Below are positions 961 through 40,581 of a DNA stretch of 64,000 bases, piece after piece. Source of the DNA: Mytilus edulis (taxonomy: Eukaryota). The stretch spans positions 82,150,001-82,214,000 of the forward strand of contig NC_092346.1 in the NCBI RefSeq assembly GCF_963676685.1, read 5' to 3'. The notes beneath the pieces were generated by a model, which did not search any database, was not told the origin of the DNA, and saw only the letters and a list, made by a program, of their open reading frames with translations. How positions within the stretch are numbered: position 1 is the stretch's first letter; every line of letters starts with the position of its first letter. The translations under genes were made by a program, and so were the position numbers.

Positions 961-2847
961 GGAACAAATAAACTTATCATAGATACCAAGATTGAAATTT
1001 TGTATTTGCGCCTGACGCGCGTTTCGTCTACAGAAGACTCAAAGAAACACAAGATGGCATATAGACAAAACACATTAGTGAAAATGAAAGACAAGAATAC
1101 AAGAATTTACCATAGCACAATAACACAAATAACGGGGTAACAAAATCACAAAAAGGCATACACATAAAACACAGTAGCAAATATAAAAACAAAATAATAC
1201 AAAAATTTACCAAAGCACAATGCCGCAATGACGGGAAGTATAAGTACAGAACCAGGCAAAGTAGATATCACAAAAAAAAAAACGACTAAAAAGTAAAAGT
1301 ATTTTTCATAAAGACAAATAAATGAATACTATAACAAAGTATTAAGATTATGAACATTGTCAGTACCCAGTATCTTTACTTCAAGACCACCGTGTATTTT
1401 TTGTGAAATTGATACGGAATAGTTAACAACAAGGTTTTGGTACATGCACTTTCCGATGTAACTTTTTAGAAAAAGGACGAGACGTTATTTGAAATACCCC
1501 TGGCTCATCAATATTCGACTCAGACTCTGGGGGGAGAGAAAAAGAACGGTGCTGACTTTTGTCAAATTATCTATTTTTTAATAATTAAGAATTATAGAAT
1601 TACAGAGTTTTTTATTCCATACTTTTACACAAACTTATAATTTTTTTCGAAATTGCAATTTTCTCTGTTTGTTTGTCTTGTTGGTACCTTAATTTGTCTT
1701 TTTTTAATAAATGTCCGAAATTTGAACATAAAAAAAACTACTGTGTCGGCTACGACATGTTATTAAATCTTGCGTTAAACTATTCTACTCTGTAACTTCT
1801 TATTATGCTGTTACATTTATGTTTAATTCAGAGGTCAGTAAGCATGCTTGTAGCTATTTAAACTTATCATCGGATGTTGTACTTACTATTATTTGCTGCA
1901 TACTATACTCCTTATTGAGACCTGTCTTTAGTAAACCTCTACATACATTGTAAACCTAATAAATTAATGGATTTGCCATAATTTTATGAAACCTCAATTT
2001 CTATGATACAAATGCATTTCTAGAATGACAAAACAAAACAAGCTATAGATAATTCTTTGAAAAAATGATTGTTTGATTCTACAAAAATGAAGTAAACTGT
2101 GAAATTGTTGATCGAGTTGTTTCTTCACACCAAAATACTTATATCATTTGATACTATTTGTAGTTGGATATATTAGAATGCAATCAACAACAGTTTTTGA
2201 AATAATTTTTATAAAATTCGCCGAATAAGTTAAGAACGCGAAGTCAATAAACACTCTAAAAATCAAAATCTACAGAAATCAGAGCAGAACAGTATAAATA
2301 TTCTTAGGTCAACATTACTTTGAGAGTTACAACCTAAGTGCCGCTAAAATTACATAAATTTTGAATTTTGAATTTTAAACCTTTGCCAAACCTAAATAAA
2401 TGAATACCAGCCAGATGTTACCTTCAAGGCGGGAATTTCACTACCAAAACAATTTGTAGTAAACTAGCAATGTAATATTATAATATACCGACATTTGTTA
2501 GTGCTTATGACAACTAGTAACTTCTATCTGGTATGCTCAAGAAGAATATTTTGATAAGCCGAATACATAATCATATAAAAGTATTACAATTTCAACCTCA
2601 AATGGACAGACACAATTGTCTTTACCTTTTGTCTGTGAGATGATTTACAAACTCACAGCACTGACTTCATTTCAAAACTGATTATTTACAATGAAAATGT
2701 ATCACCAATGATTCTTTTAATAGGTTGATGTAGACGTACGAACAAATAAAATGACAAAGATAACTATGTATACCCGCTTCAGTTAGGGTGGTGATAGGTT
2801 TGTATTAGATTTAAAAATAGAAAGGAGAGATACAAATGGTTGTCGTT

Positions 2848-3126
2848 TCAACATACCATATCTAGATAGACACAGCTTGTTCTGTTCTTGTTGTTCGGAA
2901 GAATACCGGACCATTCTGGTCTCGACCAGTATATTCTAAACCCTGCTTCAAACAGCTTTCTCAAGTGTTTTAGTGCTGACAAATACTTGATTCCAGACTT
3001 AGGATCTCCATAACTAATCCGAATAGATAGCTGTTGTATTTCATTGAGCATACCACTTTTTATCACCTGCTCCACAATTCTCTCAGTAAGGTTGCCAACA
3101 TCAATAATTAGTATACCCTGGCCATT
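2848..3126 (-). CDS. METTL24-like (Methyltransf_22-type) protein, terminal exon
   Basis: Acceptor ctcttgatag, phase 0. Reads NGQGILIIDVGNLTERIVEQVIKSGMLNEIQQLSIRIS...LKHLRKLFEAGFRIYW...TSCVYLDMVC*, resembling the METTL24 C-terminal pattern (ILKxDxE, GxLxxIxQLxxE, LxxxGFR, SCY). Confidence 0.7.
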   Translation of the reverse strand, partial: NGQGILIIDVGNLTERIVEQVIKSGMLNEIQQLSIRISYGDPKSGIKYLSALKHLRKLFEAGFRIYWSRPEWSGILPNNKNRTSCVYLDMVC

Positions 3127-3887
3127 CTATCAAGAGTGAAATAAGCATGTACATTTAACAGTTAAGCATATAAACATCCGATAAATACTGAACAGACAAA
3201 GGGATATAATATTTTTTGAAACATTTTGAAAAAAAACATCATTATTTTTTAAGTATGCCAATGTCTTTCTGTTTTCTAATGACGTTTCTATGTGTAAATC
3301 CCATTATATAAACTGCTTAATAAAGGAATTAGGTAATGAACGATTCACTAGGAAACTCAACATGAACCCGAATGGCAATCACAAAGGTGGAAATCCTGAA
3401 TAAACGTATGTATATTTCTTTTTACTTTTAAACAAACAAATAAAAACTGGATCGTCTTTCAATGTATTGAATACATAAATTACATAAGCGTCCTTACAAA
3501 CAAAGTTAAATTGTGGGCTTTTCCGAGTGCTCTAAGAAACGTCTTTCAAAATGATCAACATCCATCAGCGCTTAAGGTGGATCAGGACTATTCGACTGCG
3601 CACAATTTCACGCATGAATTACCATGCATAAGAAAAGTTTGTGTCGTAAATCTTCTTTTATTTTTTTAAATATTTTGATTGATTAAAAATGTTAAATTAT
3701 TGTACTTTTGCCACTAACAAATTATTATCGTTGATATGTGTATCTGTGGAAGACTCAAAATGACATTTCACCCAATTTCACCATTGTCCCGCCAAAATTT
3801 TGGGTTTAAGGCCAAACATTTTTTTTAGGTTTCGGCGACCTATGTTTTTTATTTGCTTATTCTTTGAAGCAATATTTCAGATTTTTG

Positions 3888-4615
3888 AAAGTTTGGTAAC
3901 TATGTTCAACGCATCTTTTCCATCCAAAATCAAATAAATGCTATCAAAGATACATATTAGTCTGTATCATATCTTGATTTACATCTAGAAATTGACATTG
4001 AGGGTCGGTTGAGAACTACTAATCAAGAAAAAAGATGATTCCTACTTCCGATTGTGAATTTTCCTTTTCTATGTTTCAAAATTCCAACAACACCTGAATA
4101 TAGAGTATATATCTACAGTTGAAACGAAATTCAATCGCTTGCATTTCCTATTACGATTCAAGAAAGCTTTTAAACCAAGAGTTCCAAGTGGGGAAGATAA
4201 AGATATCAATTCGAAAATGTTCGAACAGCGGTATACTACTGTTGCCTTTATTTACGCACGCCATTCCGAATGGGTTGGTATGAAAGATCTGTTTCACAGA
4301 TGAAGAATGATATGTTTCAATTGTCATTACTACAATCCTGACCTCTTTTCTACGAATGTAACCTATAGAACAAGACTTATCATTGGGTTTGTACTTGCAG
4401 CATGAACAGCACGATGGTGACACACGAAGAGCACATGTCATTGCCCTTACGGAGCATCTGAGATCACCACCAGTTTTTGGTGTTGTTCCTATGCTTAGTC
4501 TTTAGTTTTTTATTTTGTGTTTTGTAAACTGTTATTTGTCTTTTGGTAGTTTTTCTATTTTTAGCAATGACCTTGTCAGTTTGAGTGTCGTTTTTGTATC
4601 TTTCGCCTCTTTTAT
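3888..4615 (+). mobile_element. Degenerate Penelope-like retroelement 3' fragment
   Basis: Diverged copy of 51214-51949 (SYLDLHLEIDIEGRL...), with stops and frameshifts. Confidence 0.7.
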
Positions 4616-7600
4616 TGCATTTGGTTGTTAAAAAAAGGAGGGATTCGTTTAACTTTTGTTGTGTTGTATTCGTTCTATTTTTACAATGAGCATATGCGTT
4701 GTTTCTATCGACAACAGTCTTCTCTATTCATTTACTAGTACAATGTTTGCATTTCATATTCCAGATACCTTAGTTAACCTCGTTTTAGTTTTAGTTTGGG
4801 TCATGTTACATAATCTTTCGTTTCTTTCTTGTACTGTGGAATTCTACTATGTTCGTTTTTATTTAATTGATGTTTATGGCGTAGCAGTTAAGGTTGCAAA
4901 TTTTGATGTTTTTTGTCGTTGACACGTTCTAATTAATTTAAGCATATAACAAAACAATACAGTTCAACTTTGAAAGCTGTTCTATGGTCAGGAGAAGTGA
5001 TGAACACAAAATCTCCTGTCTTATATCACCATAGTGAAGAAAAAAACATTTCTTTTCGATCGCTTTTTCTACATATTAACACTACGTATTATCGTGTACA
5101 CATACCAATACCCAAAAATTTCAAAAAATTTCGGGGATAACAAAATCCTTATATACAGTCATATAAAACGAGATTCTTGAATTTAAATGTTAAGGAAATA
5201 ATTTAACCAATACATGTATATGTTCCGGACCATATAAATATTTGGACCATACGCGAATGGTGATCCGATGGTCCGACGATGCGCGTATTATTTTGTTTTT
5301 GTAGCCTAATAAGGATAGTATTCTCCATTATGATTTCACACAGAACATAAATCAGTGGTTTATGTATAACTCAAAGTTTATTATTTACCCTCAAATCAGG
5401 TTGTTTCTCTGTCTTTCATTAAAAGCTCCAGGGGATGAAATTGCCGATATAAGAGAAATCTAAAAAGTGTTTGCTAAGTACTTTCCTGTATTTAGTTCTT
5501 GTTATTTGGTTTGTGAAGATGACAAAAATGCTATACCAATTTGCTTTTCACTGCATAGCTCCATTCATCAAGCTTTGTGGGTTGACCTACTATTCTATTG
5601 TTACTCTTTTCTGATGCATATATTTCATTTGTTCCAATTTTTACGCTTAAATGAAGGAATAAACAAAAGATAATTATAAATAAAAGTCTAAAGATGTGTT
5701 CAACGGTACTAACATATGATCGTAATATACAAAGTAAAATCACAAAAATACTGAATTCAGAGTAAAATCAAATCGGAAAGTCCCTAATCACATGGCAAAA
5801 TCAAATGACAAAACACATCAAAAACGAATGGACAACAACTGTCTAAGAGAATTTTAGAAAATTGTGCTGTCAATCAAATAGCCTTCGTCATAGAGTTATT
5901 TTGATATCTTCGAATTTTTATCCACAGTAACTTACAAAAATACAAGTATATAATTTATTCGTATATATATTTAATTATTATAATAGTGTAACCCTCGCAT
6001 TAATAAATAATTTATTTTTGCATGTGGTGTAGTAAAATGTTGATGCACTCGTTCTATTGCTAGAACCCTTACCTTTTTAATCGATACATTCGGTAGATTT
6101 TCCAACTGGGGCTTTTAACATATTTAGATTTTTTTCTCGTATTAAGCAAGATCTATCTTCATAGTATAGTATGTAGTTTGTAATACTTCCTGTATATCAC
6201 ATTGAGTTCAAAGTGTTTGTATTTATTTATTGTTGTTTAAATAACGATCAGTGACAAGTATTTTATAAATAAACAAGACAAAACAAATTAGAATACAATA
6301 GACAGTTTCTGCAAAGCAACCAAGATAGAAGGCAGCAGAATTTAGACAACAACTGGAAAAATATACAAGACATGTTGTTTAGATACAGAATGTTGTCAAA
6401 CCTAATGAATTTGTTTTAAACTACTCAATTTTCCATCTAATGTGAATCCATAATTTGTATGGTTTATACATTTTATAGCTGATACTCTTCTTACTACAAA
6501 GATCGTCCCGAGAAAACGCAATAACTGTCAAATAAACCGTTTAGTAACCTACACTCATTTCAGATATCTTAGTTCACCTTTGACAGAGTTATTTCGGTAT
6601 CTTCGACTTATTATCCATAAGAACTTACAAAATACAATTATATAATTATGTATCAACACTTTTGATATGTGTTCTACTTATTACCTACGTCGAAGCGACT
6701 TATAGTACGTACTTCTTGGAACGTATTACTCAAATTGACGTACCAAATATAAAACGGAATGACTTTTCTTTTAAGTTTATGTTTTTTATAATAATATACA
6801 AAGCAGGTTTAATAATTGTAACACTTTTATGAAGACTTGTGATCAAATAACAGCCATGTATCAATGTACCTTGGTGTATGGCTGTGAACGTTGATCTTAT
6901 AAGTCATGTTGATACTCTGGATATTTTCATAATCATTTACTGTGCTACAAAAAATAATCAGTGTGTTATATCTTCGCATTGTTTTCAAATATCATATAAT
7001 GCATGTTATATTTCACACAAATAAAAATTACTAACAACTAGCAGTAGCATGCACTTCTCCCTTTTAAGAGATCAGAACATTTTCATAATAATTGAAATGA
7101 TTTTGTAATGCTCATACGTTGGATACTAAAAGTAGTACATTGCAAAAGAGTAAAAATCTTAAAGGATATTATTTATTCTCATAAGATATTGCGAACTCAA
7201 ATAGTAATTGATAAATCTTATAAAATAAAGCTATAATCCCATGACATAATCAAACACAAACAGGAGTGTAAGTGTTCCTGCTACCGTAGCTATATATTAG
7301 ATGACATTGGGAAATATAATTGGGAATGTGTCAATGCGACAACAATCCGACCATAGAGCAGACAACATCCGAGTGCCACCAATGGGTCTTCAGTGTAGCG
7401 AGAAACTTCCGCACCCGGAAGCGTCCTTCAGCTGGCCCCTTAAAAAATATGTATTTTTTACAGCTATATACTAGTATTATACTATATCTTGTGTGTAATA
7501 TGTTTACAATCGTTAACACATTCATTAATTGACTGACAGTTAGAAAAAGAATTTACATTATATACTACTTTGCACAAATTAATAATGAAGTAACCCCGCC

Positions 7601-32482: not shown

Positions 32483-33084
32483 TACGCTTTATCATATATT
32501 TCAACAGAAGAGTATTATATTATATGAACTGTTTTCTGATCCATAGCACTGGGTTACCTTCAGTTCTACTTTTGTCTTGTTTCAAAGGCCTTAAAAGAAC
32601 TGCTCAACTACTTATCCGAAGCACCTGGGTTACCTTACAATTTGTGTGCTGTTGTTTTAAAAATATTTTGTTTATTATTGTATTAATTTGTGTGTTTTGT
32701 ATTTTTCATAGTTGCATTTAGTGTGCCAAAAAATATGAAAACTTGACGTTCGTGACGTCACATACAATGTGAAAACTCGACGTTCGTGACGTCACATACC
32801 AAACAATGACGTCATTCAAAAAATTTACCTATTTTGAGGAAAAATTTTCTTAAGCAAAAAAAAAAAACCAAAACTGACTGTTATGTAAAAAAAAAAAAAA
32901 AAAAAAGTAGGGGTGTGATAAAGGGTATGCGATAAAGGGTAGGGGTGTGATAAAGGGTATGCGATAAAGGGTGCGCATCAAAGTTGCGCGATATGGATTA
33001 AACAGCAGGCTATTTATCACATATGCAAAACTACTGTATTTACTACTAAACATATGATAAATATGTATTATAATATATAAATGA

Positions 33085-33228: not shown

Positions 33229-33349
33229 GTATTAATTGTGATGCATCAGCATATGCACATCAATATTTAGTCAGGTATGCCCAAAGTCAATACAAACAGT
33301 AAAGTTGACACCATTCATTGCTGAGAAACACAAAGGAATACTGGGGACA

Positions 33350-36300
33350 CTGGTAAGCTATCGATAATGTCACGACAAGGTCCTAAACCATATGGCCGAG
33401 ATCCTTGATGTTTAGAGAAGGAAGAAGAGACCAGCAACAACAGAGGCAACGAATATCAGATTCGTTAGAAAGGGAGATACAGGTCATGTGCAACAAAAGT
33501 CACAACAGCACTTCACCTTGGACATGGACAGTGAATGGAACATGAGGGCTGATATTGGCAAAAAGCCCTGAATGTGTACAGAAACCCCTACGATCAGACA
33601 TTGTAGTTTGGTCAAAGAAGCCAAAGATGATAGTATCAGTAGAACTAGAGAGAGATGTGAACAGGCATACCAGCGGAAGAAAGAGAAGTACACAGAGCTG
33701 ATGACAACCTGAAGATAGAGAGGTTAGAAAGTGTGGCTGTTCCGAGTAGAAATAGGCTGCAGATAATTTACTGCACAGTCAGTTTACAGGCAATTGGAGT
33801 AGTTGAAAAAGGCACGGAAGACAGCAGTAAGACAGTTAGAGGAAGCAGCTGAAAAGGCACAGAAGACAGCAGTAAGTTATAGGAAGCAGCTGAAAAGGCA
33901 CGGAAGACAGCAGTAAGACAGTTAGAGGAAGTAGCTGAAAATGCACAGAAGACAGCAGTAAGACAGTTAGAGGAAGCAGCTGAAAGAGCACGGAAGACAG
34001 CAGTAAGACAGTTAGAGGAAGCAGCTGAAAAGGCACAGAAGACAGCAGTAAGACAATTAGAGGAAGCAGTTGAAAAGGCACGGAAGACAGAAGTAAGACA
34101 GTTAGAAGAAGCAGCTGAAAGGCACGGAAGACAGCAGTAAGACAGTTAGAGAAAGCAGCTGAAAGGGCACGGAAGACAGCAGTAAGACAGTTAGAGGAAG
34201 CAGCTGAAAAGGCACGGAAGACAGCAGTAAGACAGTTAGAGGAAGCAGCTGAAAAGGCACGGAAGACAGCAGTAAGACAGTTAGAGGAAGCAGCTGAAAG
34301 GGCACGGAAGACAGCAGTAAGACAATTAGAGGAAGCAGCTGAAAAGGCACGGAAGACAGCAGTAAGACAGTTAGAGGAAGCAGCTGAAAAGACATGGAAG
34401 ACAGCAGTAAGACAATTAGAGGAAGCAGTTGATAAGGCACGGAAGACAGAAGTAAGACAGTTAGAGGAAGCAGCTGAAAGGTACGGAAGACAGCAGTAAG
34501 ACAGTTAGAGGAAGCAGATAAAAAGGCACGGAAGACAACTGTAAGACAATTAGAGGAAGCAGTTGAAAAGGCACGGAAGACAGCAGTAAGACAGTTAGTG
34601 GAAGCAGCTGAAAAGGCACGAAAGACAGCAGTAAGACAGTAAGTGGGAGCAGCTAAAAAGGCACGGAAGACAGCAGTAAGACAGTTAGAGGAAACAGCTG
34701 AAAAGGCACGGAAGACAGCAGTAAGACAGTTAGAGGAAGCAGCTGAAAGGGCACGGAAGACAGCAGTAAGACAGTTAGAGAAGCAGCTGAAAAGGCACGG
34801 AAGACAGCAGTAAAACAGTTAGAGGAAGCAGCTGAAAAGGCACGGAAGACAGCAGTAAGACAGTTAGAGGAAGCAGCTGAAAAGGCACGGAAGACAGCAG
34901 TAAGACAGTTAGAGGAAGCAGCTGAAAAGACACGGAAGGTAGCAGTAAGACAATTAGAGGAAGCAGTTGATAAGGCACGGAAGACAGAAGTAAGACAGTT
35001 AGAGGAAGCAGCTGAAAGGTACGGAAGACAGCAGTAAGACAGTTAGAGGAAGCAGATAAAAAGGCACGGAAGACAACTGTAAGACAATTAGAGGAAGCAG
35101 TTGAAAAGGCACGGAAGACAGCAGTAAGACAGTTAGTGGAAGCAGCTGAAAAGGCACGAAAGACAACAGTAAGACAGTAAGTGGGAGCAGCTAAAAAGGC
35201 ACGGAAGACAGCAGTAAGACAGTTAGAGGAAACAGCTGAAAAGGCACGGAAGACAGCAGTAAGACAGTTAGAGGAAGCAGCTGAAAGGGCACGGAAGACA
35301 GCAGTAAGACAGTTAGAGGAAGCAGCTGAAAAGGCACGGAAGACAGCAGTAAGACAGTTAGAGGAAGCAGCTGAAAAGGCACGGAAGACAGCAGTAAGAC
35401 AGTTAGAGGAAGTAGCTGAAAAGACACGGAAGACAGCAGTAAGACAGTTAGTTGAAGCAGCTGAAAAGGCACGGAAGACAGCAGTAAGACAGTTAGAGGA
35501 AGCAGTTGATAAGGCACGGAAGACAGCAGTAAGACAGTAAGAGGGAGCAGCTAAAAAGACACGGAAGACAACTGTAAGACAATTACAGGAAGCAGTTGAA
35601 AAGGCACGGAAGACAGCAGTTAGACAGTTAGAGGAAGCAGCTGAAAAGGCACGGAAGACAGCAGTAAGACAATAAGAGGGAGCAGCTAAAAAGACACGGA
35701 AGACAACTGTAAGACAATTAGAGGAAGAGGTTGAAAAGGCACGGAAGACAGCAGTAAGACAGTTAGTGAAAGCATCTGAAAAGGCACGAAAGACAGCAGT
35801 AAGACAGTAAGTGGGAGCAGCTAAAAAGGCACGGAAGACAGCAGTAAGACAGTTAGAGGAAACAGCTGAAAAGGCACGGAAGACAGCAGTAAGACAGTTA
35901 GAGGAAGCAGCTGAAAGGTCACGGAAGACAGCAGTAAGACAGTTAGAGGAAGCAGCTGAAAGGGCACGGAAGACAGCAGTAAGACAGTTAGAGGAAGCAG
36001 CTGAAAAGGCACGGAAGACAGCAGTAAGACAGTTAGAAGGAGGAGCTGAAAGGGCACGGAAGACAGCAGTAAGACAGTTAGAGGAAGCAGCTGAAAAGGC
36101 ACGGAAGACAGCAGTAAGACAGTTAGAGGAAGCAGCTGAAAAGACACGGAAGACAGCAGTAAGACAATTAGAGGAAGCAGTTGATAAGGCACGGAGGACA
36201 GAAGTAAGACAGTTAGAGGAAGCAGCTGAAAGGTACGGAAGACAGCAGTAAGACAGTTAGAGGAAGCAGCTAAAAAGGCACGGAAGACAACTGTAAGACA

Positions 36301-37022
36301 ATTAGAGGAAGCAGTTGAAAAGGCACGGAAGACAGCAGTAAGACAGTTGTGGAAGCAGCTGAAAAGGCACGAAAGACAGCAGTAAGACAGTAAGTGGGAG
36401 CAGCTAAAAAGGCACGGAAGACAGCAGTAAGACAGTTAGAGGAAACAGCTGAAAAGGCACGGAAGACAGCAGTAAGACAGTTAGAGGAAGCAGCTGAAAG
36501 GCCACGGAAGACAGCAGTAAGACAGTTAGAGGAAGCAGCTGAAAAGGCACGGAAGACAGCAGTAAGACAGTTAGAGGAAGCAGCTGAAAAGGCACGGAAG
36601 ACAGCAGTAAGACAGTTAGAGGAAGCAGCTGAAAAGGCACGGAAGACAGCAGTAAGACAGTTAGAGGAAGCAGCTGAAAAGACACGGAAGACAGCAGTAA
36701 GACAGTTAGTTGAAGCAGCTGAAAAGGCACGGAAGACAGCAGTAAGACAGTTAGAGGAAGCAGCTGAAAAGGCACGGAAGACAGCAGTAAGACAGTAAGA
36801 GGGAGCAGCTAAAAAGACACGGAAGACAGCAGTAAGACAGTTAGAGGAAGCAGCTGAAAGGCACAGAAGACAGCAGTAAGACAGTTAGAGGAAGCAGCTG
36901 AAAAGGCACAGAAGACAGCAGTAAGACAATTTGAGGAAGTAGTTGAAAAGGCACGGAAGACAGCAGTAAGACAGTTAGAGGAAGCAGCTGAACGTTCATC
37001 TTGCTGATGATGGCATCGCCGA
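33350..37022 (+). mobile_element. HERO/R2-superfamily non-LTR retrotransposon 3' remnant (RLE endonuclease), interrupted by the 45-bp array
   Basis: From 33359: YR*CHDKVLNHMAEILD, IRFVRKG, WNMRADIG, LRSDIVVWS, IVSVEL, ERCEQAYQRKKEKY, KVWLFRVEIGCR*F. After the array: EAAERSSC**WHRR. These are the RHD, RPD, EL, RKxxKY and VEVGCRGF motifs of RLE domains. Confidence 0.85.
33803..36992 (+). repeat. 45-bp tandem array, about 71 units
   Basis: Unit gaggaagcagctgaaaaggcacggaagacagcagtaagacagtta; 34 of 45 bases are purines on the + strand. Confidence 0.98.
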
Positions 37023-37442
37023 TTAATTATTATGAGTATTGTAGTTCTTTTATCCATAATTTTGATACATAAAGTTTCGCCTTCGAAGATGGCCACAGAA
37101 AGCGAAACATATTGATGCAAATCCCGCGTCTCTATCTTTCTGTATAGTTATTCTTATATCAGATGCGATGAAGATATGAATGCTACAAATTTTGTTTACT
37201 AATGCCTTATGTTTCAATGTCATCATTTTCCATCGTCCTTGATTTCATTTTTCGAGTGTTCGCTCGTGTATATCCTGATTGTAGGATGTCCAACTGGTTT
37301 TACTACCGGTTGGAAGAAGACAAAAGGAGGACAATTTTGCTATAACCTAGTCAACTCTTTGGGTTTTGAAATGCATCATGATTAACACTAAGACTTTCAT
37401 GGACTTGTTTACACTTTTGCTCCAAGACATCAAAGAAAAATG

Positions 37443-38666: not shown

Positions 38667-38833
38667 ATCATTTCAAAAAGTAAAACCCAACAGAGGGCGT
38701 TGTAATAGTCTTTACATGCAACCATCATTTCAAAAAGTAAAACCCAACAGAGAGCGTTGTAAGAATTATCTTTACATGCGACCATCATTTTAAAAAGTAA
38801 AACCCAACAGAGCGTTGTAAGAATTCTCTTTAC
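38667..38833. repeat. 57-60-bp tandem repeat, about 3 copies
   Basis: atcatttcaaaaagtaaaacccaacagag..cgttgtaa repeated. Confidence 0.9.
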
Positions 38834-39014
38834 AAAAAAAGTCAGAAGATAACTCTCTTGTCAGATTGACTGTCTATTCGTACAAGGAGACCTGGAATCA
38901 ATATACCAAAAACCTCATATAAAAAATATTTTATTTGAAACGTTTTTCCGATGTCATTCTTTGGAGTTTTTCGTTTTACTATATGCTAGTCAAGAGTGAT
39001 TAAATCAAAGTGTT

Positions 39015-39446
39015 AAGTACAACAGTGTGGTGTATTCAATACGATAGACCAGTAAAGTACAACAGTGTGGTGTATTCCATACGATAGACCAGTAAAGTAC
39101 AACAGTGTGGTGTATTCCATACGACAGACCAGTAAAGTACAACAGTGTGGTGTATTCCATACGACAGACCAGTAAAGTACAACAGTGTGGTGTATTCCAT
39201 ACGATAGACCAGTAAAGTACAACAGTGTGGTGTATTCCATACGACAGACCAGTAAAGTACAACAGTGTGGTGTATTCCATACGATAGACCAGTAAAGTAC
39301 AACAGTGTGGTGTATTCCATACGACAGCCCAGTAAAGTACAACAGTGTGGTGTATTCCATACGACAGACCAGTAAAGTACAAGAGTGTGGTGTATTCCAT
39401 ACAACAGACCAATAAAGTACAACAGTGTGGTGTATTCCATACGAGA
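39015..39446. repeat. 40-bp minisatellite, about 11 copies
   Basis: Unit aagtacaacagtgtggtgtattccatacga(c/t)agaccagta with a strict period of 40. Confidence 0.97.
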
Positions 39447-40581
39447 GAACAGGTTCCAAATTTATTCAGACTTAATTTTTTCAAAATATTGTGGGGTTGC
39501 CAAAAAAAATTATAATAGCTAATTATAATACAACCGGGGTTTTTAAGCAAACCTGGGGTAAGTTAAATTGGCGTTTCTCACGAATAAATTTGGTTCTATT
39601 ACATAAAACAACTGAAACCATTTGTTTTGGAGCATTTATTGTTCGTTTAATTTATCTTTTACCCGGATAATAAATAAAGGTCCGTCCTTGTGATGTGATA
39701 TGAGGTCTATTAGGTTTTTGAGTGTCCAATGAAAACATTCCTAGTTTAGTATGACATTCGGAGTTTAGTATGACGTCCATTATCACTGTACTATTATGCA
39801 TATTTTAGGGGCCAGCTGAAGGACACCTACGGGTGCGGGAATTCTCGCTACATTGAAGACCCATTGGTTGCCTTCGGCTGTTGTTTGCTCTATGGTCGGG
39901 TGGTTGTCGCTTTGACATATTCACCATTTCCTTTCTCAATTTTATTCATTTGAAGTTTGCATTTATAGTATTGGTTCCTTTTTCAGAAGGATATGACATA
40001 AAAAAATAAAACACGATTTTTTATTACTTCTTAATAAATAAAAAGGTAATGGACTCGCAAAAAAAGAATTGAAATATTGTAATGCAATTAAAATGTGACT
40101 TTGAGAAATATAAAACAAGATGTTGGTGTACGTCAATGAAACAGCAACCGAACAACGCAAATAGCTAAAAATCTTCTACAGGTAGGGACACAGTACTCCC
40201 GACTAAAATCCAAATTATATAAATATAACTTTTCTGTTAATAGTGACTGTACTTGAATTGAAACAATATTTGTGACTTCACAAAGTTGACATCAGACAGT
40301 TTTGACTGCTGAAGTTTAGCTCTTTTAATTAAGTAATATTATTATTTTAATATTGACTTTAAAAACTAATTTACCTCATGAATGTTATTCCAGAAAATAT
40401 ATCTGAGATTCTTTCACATTTAAAACGATGCCATGTCTTGTTTCATAACGGCCATAAGCACGTCGGTTTGACAACTACACCACGTTTAACATTACAATTT
40501 TATTTAATTATGACATCAACATACTAGTACATACTTCCTTTATTTCTATGGTACATTCAACCTATGCCAACATTTTGAAAC

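What the first reader, a model, noticed from the sequence alone, without database searches (positions are those of the whole stretch)
33350..37022. Satellite caught at birth inside a retrotransposon endonuclease ORF
Seen: the decayed RLE coding sequence runs into the array (...QAIGVV-KARKTAVRQLEEAAE) and resumes exactly after it (RSSC**WHRR). The 45-bp unit is therefore 15 codons of the element's C-terminal helix amplified about 71 times in place. Microhomology agtagttgaa / agcagctgaa marks the unit boundaries. Known: HERO-type elements end with an ...EAAE(R/K)xSxWLW motif. The units are homogeneous while the flanking element is riddled with stops, so expansion likely post-dates TE death (inference).
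Basis: partly seen in the sequence, partly recalled or inferred. Interest (0 to 1): 0.8.

Follow-up and report, generated by a model that had tools for sequence, protein, structure and literature searches.

The report
Minisatellite grown from dead retrotransposon codons
A 3.2-kb tandem repeat in a mussel-type genome grew in place from 15 codons of a dead retrotransposon's endonuclease gene; this is a clean example of a known way that repeats arise, not a new kind of element.

Summary
At 33807-36990 lie 71 head-to-tail units of 45 bp. They sit inside a decayed, truncated fragment (33346-37022) of a HERO-type non-LTR retrotransposon with a restriction-like endonuclease (RLE). At least 13 other copies in this 1.37-Gb mussel-type (Mytilus-like) assembly align through left flank, ONE unit and right flank without a break. 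The unit-to-unit junction occurs 61 times, all in this array.

In an AlphaFold model of a full-length relative, the amplified 15 codons fall wholly inside the last helix of the RLE domain. That model matches solved R2 endonuclease domains.

The sense frame is broken by eight frameshifted units and by stop-carrying units, so the array is non-coding. It holds three copies of a ~10-13-unit block, as unequal exchange would leave.

"Caught at birth" is overstated:
- Units are only ~91.5% alike.
- The junction was bridged by contigs from three organism labels, and edge-unit variants recur in three.
- It is one 3.2-kb locus, a minisatellite rather than a satellite.
- The left boundary carries a 1-bp frameshift.
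- The boundary microhomology is absent from other copies.

Repeats derived from transposable elements are well documented. This is a new member of a known kind, of modest interest.

The parts
33346..33806 (+). Left part of a decayed, 5'-truncated HERO-type LINE fragment. It holds the remnant of the zinc-knuckle/RHD region and the PD-(D/E)XK restriction-like endonuclease domain, about residues 905-1061 of a 1096-aa relative.
   Evidence: 74-80% DNA identity to more than 20 other copies in the assembly. tblastn of the full-length ORF L067 hits 33371-33859, residues 905-1076. Every frame has 8-10 stops, and the part aligned to the intact family ORF has 5 stops.
33798..33807 (+). Left boundary decamer AGTAGTTGAA, which resembles the unit end AGCAGCTGAA at 8 of 10 positions. 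An extra A here puts flank and array out of frame.
   Evidence: Read from the sequence. The equivalent decamers match at only 4/10 in other copies, by my hand count on the sequences printed. There is no 45-bp-offset self-similarity above background in a family copy.
33807..36990 (+). Array of 71 units of 45 bp, each 15 codons reading KARKTAVRQLEEAAE. The + strand is 75% purine.
   Evidence: It is unique in the assembly.
34297..34879 (+). Higher-order block, copy A (units 12-24).
   Evidence: Runs of 10 units differ by 4-6 bases and share 17-20 non-consensus sites with copies B and C. 34170-34620 matches 34709-35158 and 35922-36371 at 98%.
34880..35418 (+). Higher-order block, copy B (units 25-36).
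36049..36631 (+). Higher-order block, copy C (units 51-63).
36991..37022 (+). The element's reading frame resumes: the end of the last GAA codon, then RSSC**WHRR. Homology to the family stops at 37022, so about 235 bp of the element's 3' end (the last codons and the tail) are missing.
   Evidence: In other copies the last unit plus 30 bp aligns directly next to the single unit at 84-91%. The family continues GATGATCTGAGCTGG... where the window does not. No remainder lies elsewhere in the window.

Best explanation
A copy of a HERO-type, RLE-bearing non-LTR retrotransposon, already a fragment, lay at this site and decayed. A 45-bp stretch of it encodes the first 15 residues of the endonuclease domain's last helix. 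That stretch was duplicated in tandem, probably by replication slippage or a microhomology-mediated tandem duplication at a short TGAA/AG.AG.TGAA similarity. This first step is inferred.

Once two or more copies existed, unequal exchange and slippage between misaligned units expanded the array to 71 units. Growth included at least two duplications of blocks of about 12 units. This is shown by three near-identical blocks, and the edge units carry private variants.

The array is non-coding DNA with no sign of function. It is a single-locus minisatellite derived from a transposable-element coding sequence.
For: - The array is real and regular.
- In at least 13 other copies, left flank, one unit and right flank are contiguous. 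For example, family copy positions 157-689 align to window 33346-33852 and positions 634-720 to 36935-37022, overlapping by exactly the unit.
- Full-length relatives (1096 and 1207 aa; RVT_1 + zf-RVT + C-terminal domain) and 60 aligned proteins carry the helix once.
- The AlphaFold model has pLDDT 90.7. Its last helix spans residues 199-222, and the unit corresponds to residues 200-214.
- The fold matches R2 zinc-knuckle/RLE domains at E 3e-7, TM 0.6.
- The array is unique: the junction 30-mer matches 61 times here and nowhere else, and a 451-bp array probe finds only single units elsewhere.
- The sense frame is broken by 8 frameshifted units and by TAA-carrying units; the longest open run is 146 aa.
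- There are three copies of a 10-13-unit block, up to 98% alike.
- It is not an assembly artefact. Independent public runs give contigs bridging the left junction (492 bp with 0 differences; 503 and 318 bp with a 13-bp indel) and contigs matching units 3-8 with their private variants.
Against: - The event that made the first duplication is not observable.
- The boundary microhomology is seen only in this copy and could be a result of homogenisation rather than a cause.
- The copy lacks its 3' end, which is unusual for a target-primed insertion, so the locus has had at least one further rearrangement.
- The nearest other copies are only about 80% identical. The source subfamily is therefore not sampled, and I cannot show directly that the inserted copy had one unit.
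Confidence: 0.85

Rival explanations
1. The tandem duplication, or a short seed of it, already existed in the source element or arose during retrotransposition, for example by reverse-transcriptase template switching or slippage on the RNA. On this view the copy arrived with several units and only later expanded.
For: The source subfamily is unsampled, since the nearest copies are about 80% identical. The commonest unit is closer to family copies (35-40 of 42 aligned bases) than the flank is (74-80%), which would fit an early start of amplification.
Against: The junction search found no other locus with two adjacent units of this type in the 1.37-Gb assembly. None of the 60 aligned full-length proteins shows a repeated helix. 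A repeated terminal helix would probably harm the endonuclease domain (inference).
Confidence: 0.07
2. The array is, or was, a coding repeat. Either the sense strand gives a coiled-coil-like (KARKTAVRQLEEAAE)n protein taken over by the host, or the antisense strand gives a (QLLPLTVLLLSSVPF)n protein.
For: The period is a multiple of three. Sense open runs reach 146 aa and an antisense frame stays open for 493 aa.
Against: - Eight units shift the frame and several carry TAA in the sense frame.
- The antisense openness follows from a unit that has no stop in that frame.
- No protein in the 5.8-billion set resembles the repeat peptide (that search is length-limited and word-based).
- RNA runs hold only 0.04 of the sampled words.
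- No start, splice or exon context was found, and no non-repeat ORF of 110 aa or more lies in 24-46 kb.
Confidence: 0.02
3. The array length or structure is an assembly artefact, an over-expanded or mis-joined repeat.
For: Tandem repeats are prone to mis-assembly, and copy number was not verified with long reads.
Against: Independent runs from three organism labels (A, B, D) give contigs bridging the junction. Contigs from three labels (B, C, D) give the edge units with the same private variants, and the locus is held by runs from nine studies. The internal mosaic of 40 unit types and three block copies is not what a collapsed or expanded assembly of identical units looks like.
Confidence: 0.03

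Closest known systems
Tandem repeats (satellites or minisatellites) derived from transposable elements by tandem amplification of an element segment. Reviewed in PMC12628747 and PMC6947457; a double-insertion route is described in bioRxiv 10.1101/158386.
   Same: A short internal piece of a transposable element is amplified head-to-tail in place. Growth leaves higher-order blocks.
   Different: The review lists LTR, gag/pol of LTR elements, LINE untranslated regions, and DNA-transposon ends or centres as sources. Here the source is 15 codons of a LINE endonuclease ORF. The array is at one locus and only 3.2 kb, so it is a minisatellite and not an abundant satellite. It is not carried by a mobile element, unlike the Helitron/Helentron-borne repeats common in bivalves.
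HERO clade of RLE-bearing non-LTR retrotransposons (HEROFr, HEROTn, HERODr; PMC2790886, PMC3636483)
   Same: Full-length relatives in this genome have one ORF with reverse transcriptase, a CCHC knuckle and a C-terminal PD-(D/E)XK endonuclease. One is 47% identical over 959 aa to Takifugu BAC82598.1 and shares the tail ...EAAEKAS.WLW.
   Different: The window holds only a dead fragment of about 490 bp. The mussel full-length ORFs begin with a Cys/His motif (CxCG...IHQ....C), whereas PMC2790886 reports no motif upstream of the RT in HERO. Several loci hold full-length copies head-to-tail in tandem.
R2 retrotransposon protein, zinc-knuckle + RLE domain (PDB 9nl2, 9nl3, 9dou, 8gh6)
   Same: Same fold: Foldseek E 3e-7 to 7e-6, TM about 0.6 over about 235 residues. 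The acidic and lysine residues D122, E137 and K153 are invariant.
   Different: Sequence similarity is low: 14-19% in the structural alignment, and 63-86 bits for the whole protein against 892 bits to the fish HERO-type protein. Nothing here suggests a ribosomal-DNA target.

Membership tests
TE-derived tandem repeat (in-place amplification of an element segment) | Head-to-tail units of fixed period, far beyond chance | tested here: met
   71 units of 45 bp, TRF score 5329. 61 junction matches against 0 for the reversed control.
TE-derived tandem repeat (in-place amplification of an element segment) | The unit is homologous to a single-copy segment of the element, and both flanks continue the element in register | tested here: met
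   At least 13 copies align left flank + one unit + right flank contiguously.
TE-derived tandem repeat (in-place amplification of an element segment) | Other copies of the element lack the array | tested here: met
   Only single units (at most 51 bp) occur elsewhere, and no junction was found elsewhere. Full-length ORFs carry the helix once.
Satellite DNA in the strict sense | Abundant, long arrays, usually at several loci | tested here: not met
   One locus of 3.2 kb in a 1.37-Gb assembly.
HERO clade, RLE-bearing non-LTR retrotransposons | Single ORF: reverse transcriptase, then CCHC knuckle, then C-terminal PD-(D/E)XK endonuclease | tested here: met
   This holds for full-length relatives L067 (1096 aa) and L068 (1207 aa): Pfam RVT_1 and zf-RVT, CPLC...H....C and RPD/ELT/K motifs, and a fold match to R2 RLE. 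The window copy keeps only the last part.
HERO clade, RLE-bearing non-LTR retrotransposons | Groups with HERO reference elements rather than R2, NeSL, R4 or CRE in an RT phylogeny | tested here: inconclusive
   47% identity over 959 aa (892 bits) to BAC82598.1 of Takifugu, against 63-86 bits to solved R2 proteins. That BAC82598.1 is HEROFr (AB097130) is inferred from species and accession block. No tree with NeSL, R4 or CRE references was built, because no reference sequences were available in the tools.
HERO clade, RLE-bearing non-LTR retrotransposons | No target-site specificity | not tested
   Insertion sites of the copies were not compared.
R2 clade | Insertion at a fixed site of 28S ribosomal DNA, and close RT similarity to R2 | tested here: not met
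   Sequence similarity to R2 is weak compared with HERO-type proteins. Copies are spread over all chromosomes. The flanks were not checked for ribosomal DNA.

The most novel reading that the evidence does not exclude
The locus could be a datable series for how a repeat is born from coding DNA. Suppose outgroup mussels keep the same dead fragment with one unit while members of the Mytilus edulis complex carry arrays of different length and block structure. The steps would then be reconstructible at one locus: point changes creating a TGAA microhomology, a first duplication, unit slippage, and 12-unit block exchange. The 75% purine strand bias of these 15 codons might be what makes this helix-coding stretch expansion-prone.
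Probability: 0.15. Interest if true: 0.45.

Novelty: new member of a known kind. Interest (0 to 1): 0.3.

Why it matters
The case is clear because the ancestral single-copy state is preserved in dozens of paralogous copies and both boundaries are exact to the base. It adds the ORF of a LINE endonuclease to the listed sources of element-derived tandem repeats, and it could serve as a variable-number marker in mussels. It does not change how such repeats are thought to arise.

Tried and rejected
- Pfam on the intact 135-aa family ORF gave no family. The domain was identified instead through full-length relatives, an AlphaFold model and Foldseek.
- A megablast self-comparison of the array with a 96% filter printed nothing. 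I replaced it with a unit-type analysis.
- I looked for a pre-existing direct repeat spaced 45 bp apart in a family copy as the slippage substrate. It scored 11/20 matches, equal to the background median, so I rejected it.
I laid only 33300-34250. The right junction and copy number in other samples were therefore not checked.
- A search for proteins resembling the repeat peptide found none.
- The coding reading was rejected because of frameshifts and stops.
- Earlier scan notes hold nothing on this locus or on HERO elements.

Full report
**Observation.** Tandem Repeats Finder reports one array at 33807-36992 with period 45, 71.0 copies, 91% matches and score 5329. Cutting it unit by unit gives 71 units at 33807-36990: 63 of 45 bp, seven of 44 bp and one of 41 bp. 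There are 40 distinct unit types, the commonest occurs 17 times, and mean pairwise identity is 91.5%.

The left flank ends ...SLQAIGVV, the unit reads KARKTAVRQLEEAAE, and the sequence after the array reads RSSC**WHRR.

Two details differ from the finder's account. An extra A at the left boundary (five A at 33806-33810, four at unit junctions) puts flank and array out of frame. The right boundary is in frame.

**The flanks are one element, interrupted by the array.** The left flank (33330-33806) has 43 matches in the window's own assembly, which is 1.37 Gb in 2368 contigs. The best of these are 76-80% identical.

When left flank plus first unit, and last unit plus right flank, are aligned to these loci, both land on adjacent, overlapping positions. 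In L003, for example, the left query ends at 1458 and the right query covers 1498-1424. Those copies therefore carry left flank, exactly one unit and right flank with no break.

The reverse test gives the same answer. A family copy (L052, reverse strand) aligns with its positions 157-689 to window 33346-33852 and its positions 634-720 to window 36935-37022. The overlap is the unit. One such copy has an intact 135-aa ORF ending ...LQAMGIVGKARKTAVRQLGEAAERSSCWLWYRRDDLSWKPSADE.

Homology stops at 37022. The family runs on for about 235 bp that the window lacks, and no remainder lies elsewhere in the 64 kb. The window copy is thus a fragment cut at both ends.

It is also decayed. The part aligned to the intact ORF has five stops, and each frame of 33346-33806 has 8-10 stops.

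**What the element is.** The 135-aa ORF has no Pfam match. A protein search of the assembly finds the same domain at the end of long open frames. Two of these are ORFs of 1096 aa (L067) and 1207 aa (L068) with Pfam RVT_1 and a weak zf-RVT hit.

A word search with the last 237 residues returns 244 proteins from molluscs, lancelets and fishes. The best is 90% identical and comes from Mytilus trossulus, so the genome is mussel-type. An alignment of 60 of them gives the tail ...PVEVGCRGFxAQSxWRxLxxLGIxGxxRxxAxxxxxEAAERASxWLW, with invariant D122, E137 and K153. This confirms the motif the finder recalled.

One hit is BAC82598.1 of Takifugu rubripes. PMC2790886 gives HEROFr as AB097130, the only Takifugu element in its AB0971xx block, so this protein is probably HEROFr. 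That link is an inference. The mussel ORF is 47% identical to it over 959 aa at 892 bits, against 63-86 bits to solved R2 proteins.

An AlphaFold model of the last 236 residues is confident (pLDDT 90.7, pTM 0.85). Its best structural matches are the zinc-knuckle/RLE parts of R2 proteins (9nl2, 9nl3, 9dou, 8iby, 8gh6; E 3e-7 to 7e-6, TM about 0.6). Next come PD-(D/E)XK cap-snatching nucleases. "HERO-type RLE element" is therefore well supported, although I built no formal tree.

**The amplified piece is the start of the last helix.** In the model the final helix spans residues 199-222. The residues that align with the unit (QNRRAAIKKLGQAAE, 200-214) lie wholly inside it.

**The array is unique to this locus.** A 451-bp probe from the array matches only this locus, plus single units of at most 51 bp in other element copies. 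The 30-nt unit-to-unit junction, allowing 3 mismatches, matches 61 times. All matches lie at C3:82183841-82186964, which is this array, and the reversed control matches 0 times. No intact or decayed family member carries a second unit.

**How it grew.**
- Units 12-21, 27-36 and 51-63 form three copies of a block of about 10-13 units. These differ by 4-6 bases per ten units and share 17-20 non-consensus sites. At the DNA level, 34170-34620 matches 34709-35158 and 35922-36371 at 98%.
- Several units at the two ends carry private variants. Unit 2 has a 4-bp deletion and differs from the commonest unit at 6 positions, and unit 70 differs at 5.
- This pattern is what unequal exchange between misaligned units leaves behind.
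- The first duplication cannot be seen. The decamer at the left edge (AGTAGTTGAA) matches the unit end (AGCAGCTGAA) at 8/10 positions.
- In other copies the equivalent decamers match at only 4/10, by my hand count on the sequences. A family copy also shows no 45-bp-offset self-similarity above background.
- The microhomology is therefore specific to this copy. It may have arisen by point changes that then allowed slippage, or by later homogenisation.

**Relative age.**
- The flank is 74-80% identical to other copies.
- The commonest unit is 35-40 of 42 aligned bases identical to their single units.
- Units are 91.5% alike, and blocks are up to 98% alike.
- Expansion therefore went on long after the copy had diverged, and continued recently. 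An early start is not excluded.

**Not coding.** The sense frame is interrupted by eight frame-shifting units and by TAA-carrying units, and the longest open run is 146 aa. A 493-aa open run on the opposite strand follows from a unit with no stop in that frame. No protein in the large database resembles the repeat peptide, and RNA runs hold almost none of the words. The array's + strand is 75% purine.

**Not an artefact, and not newborn.**
- Seventeen public runs hold at least 78% of the sampled words of 33346-33900. They carry four coded organism labels plus gill and mollusc metagenomes; counting runs with smaller shares, nine studies hold the stretch or part of it.
- A 492-bp contig of run X1 matches 33345-33836 without a difference.
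- Contigs of X15 (503 bp) and X3 (318 bp) bridge the left junction and carry 13 extra bases at 33647/33648, an allelic indel.
- Contigs from organisms B, C and D match units 3-8, with their private variants, at 0-3 differences.
- Loose ends at 33849 come from the single-unit paralogues.
- No single-unit allele of this locus was seen, though contigs cannot prove its absence.
- The array edge thus predates the coalescence of these samples.

**Comparison with what is known.** Reviews list tandem repeats formed from LTRs, gag/pol of LTR elements, LINE untranslated regions and DNA-transposon parts, and expansion of short internal arrays, especially in bivalve Helitrons/Helentrons (PMC12628747; PMC6947457). 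This case uses a LINE endonuclease ORF as its source and stays at one locus. It is a new member of a known kind.

Noticed in passing
L067 (G000:C11:12309000-12318999) 2084-7461; also the pairs, e.g. C7:51250320/51253714/51257418, C2:105204999/105208892, C5:67985262/67989156, C6:76532388/76536283: Full-length HERO-type elements lie head-to-tail in tandem at unit-length spacing (3.4-3.9 kb) at eight or more loci. In L067 two copies are 100% identical over the 300 nt compared, 3696 bp apart. This could mean self-targeted insertion or recent tandem duplication. I did not find it described for HERO.
   Followed up: partly
L052 996-1837 (G000:C5), L053, L054: A short family of about 850 bp consists only of the knuckle/RLE end of the element plus its tail. 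The copies share a common 5' end and are 94-96% alike. One copy keeps an intact 135-aa endonuclease-only ORF. This may be a non-autonomous tail element mobilised by full-length relatives. No full-length parent more than 60% identical at protein level was seen.
   Followed up: partly
L067 861-1692: A 98-bp tandem repeat of at least 7 copies lies about 0.5 kb beyond the stop codon of the full-length element. It may be part of the element's 3' region or its insertion target.
   Followed up: no
window 33647-33648: Contigs from organisms B and D carry 13 extra bases (ACTGATCATTG + AA) in the dead endonuclease sequence, at the ELTVPWE motif, compared with the window. This is an allelic indel in the flank.
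   Followed up: partly
window 39015-39452 and 38667-38834: Two further tandem repeats lie 2 kb downstream: 40 bp x 10.9 copies at 95% matches, open on the minus strand for 181 aa, and 60 bp x 2.9 copies.
   Followed up: no
window 37092-37340: A different dispersed repeat family starts about 70 bp after the truncated end of the element. It has ten other copies in the assembly at 72-83% identity and may relate to the loss of the element's 3' end.
   Followed up: no
window 32732-32972: Upstream of the fragment lie a 34-bp direct repeat containing TGACGTCA motifs, two long A runs and a 32-bp x 2 perfect repeat. These are probably tails of other retroposed elements.
   Followed up: no
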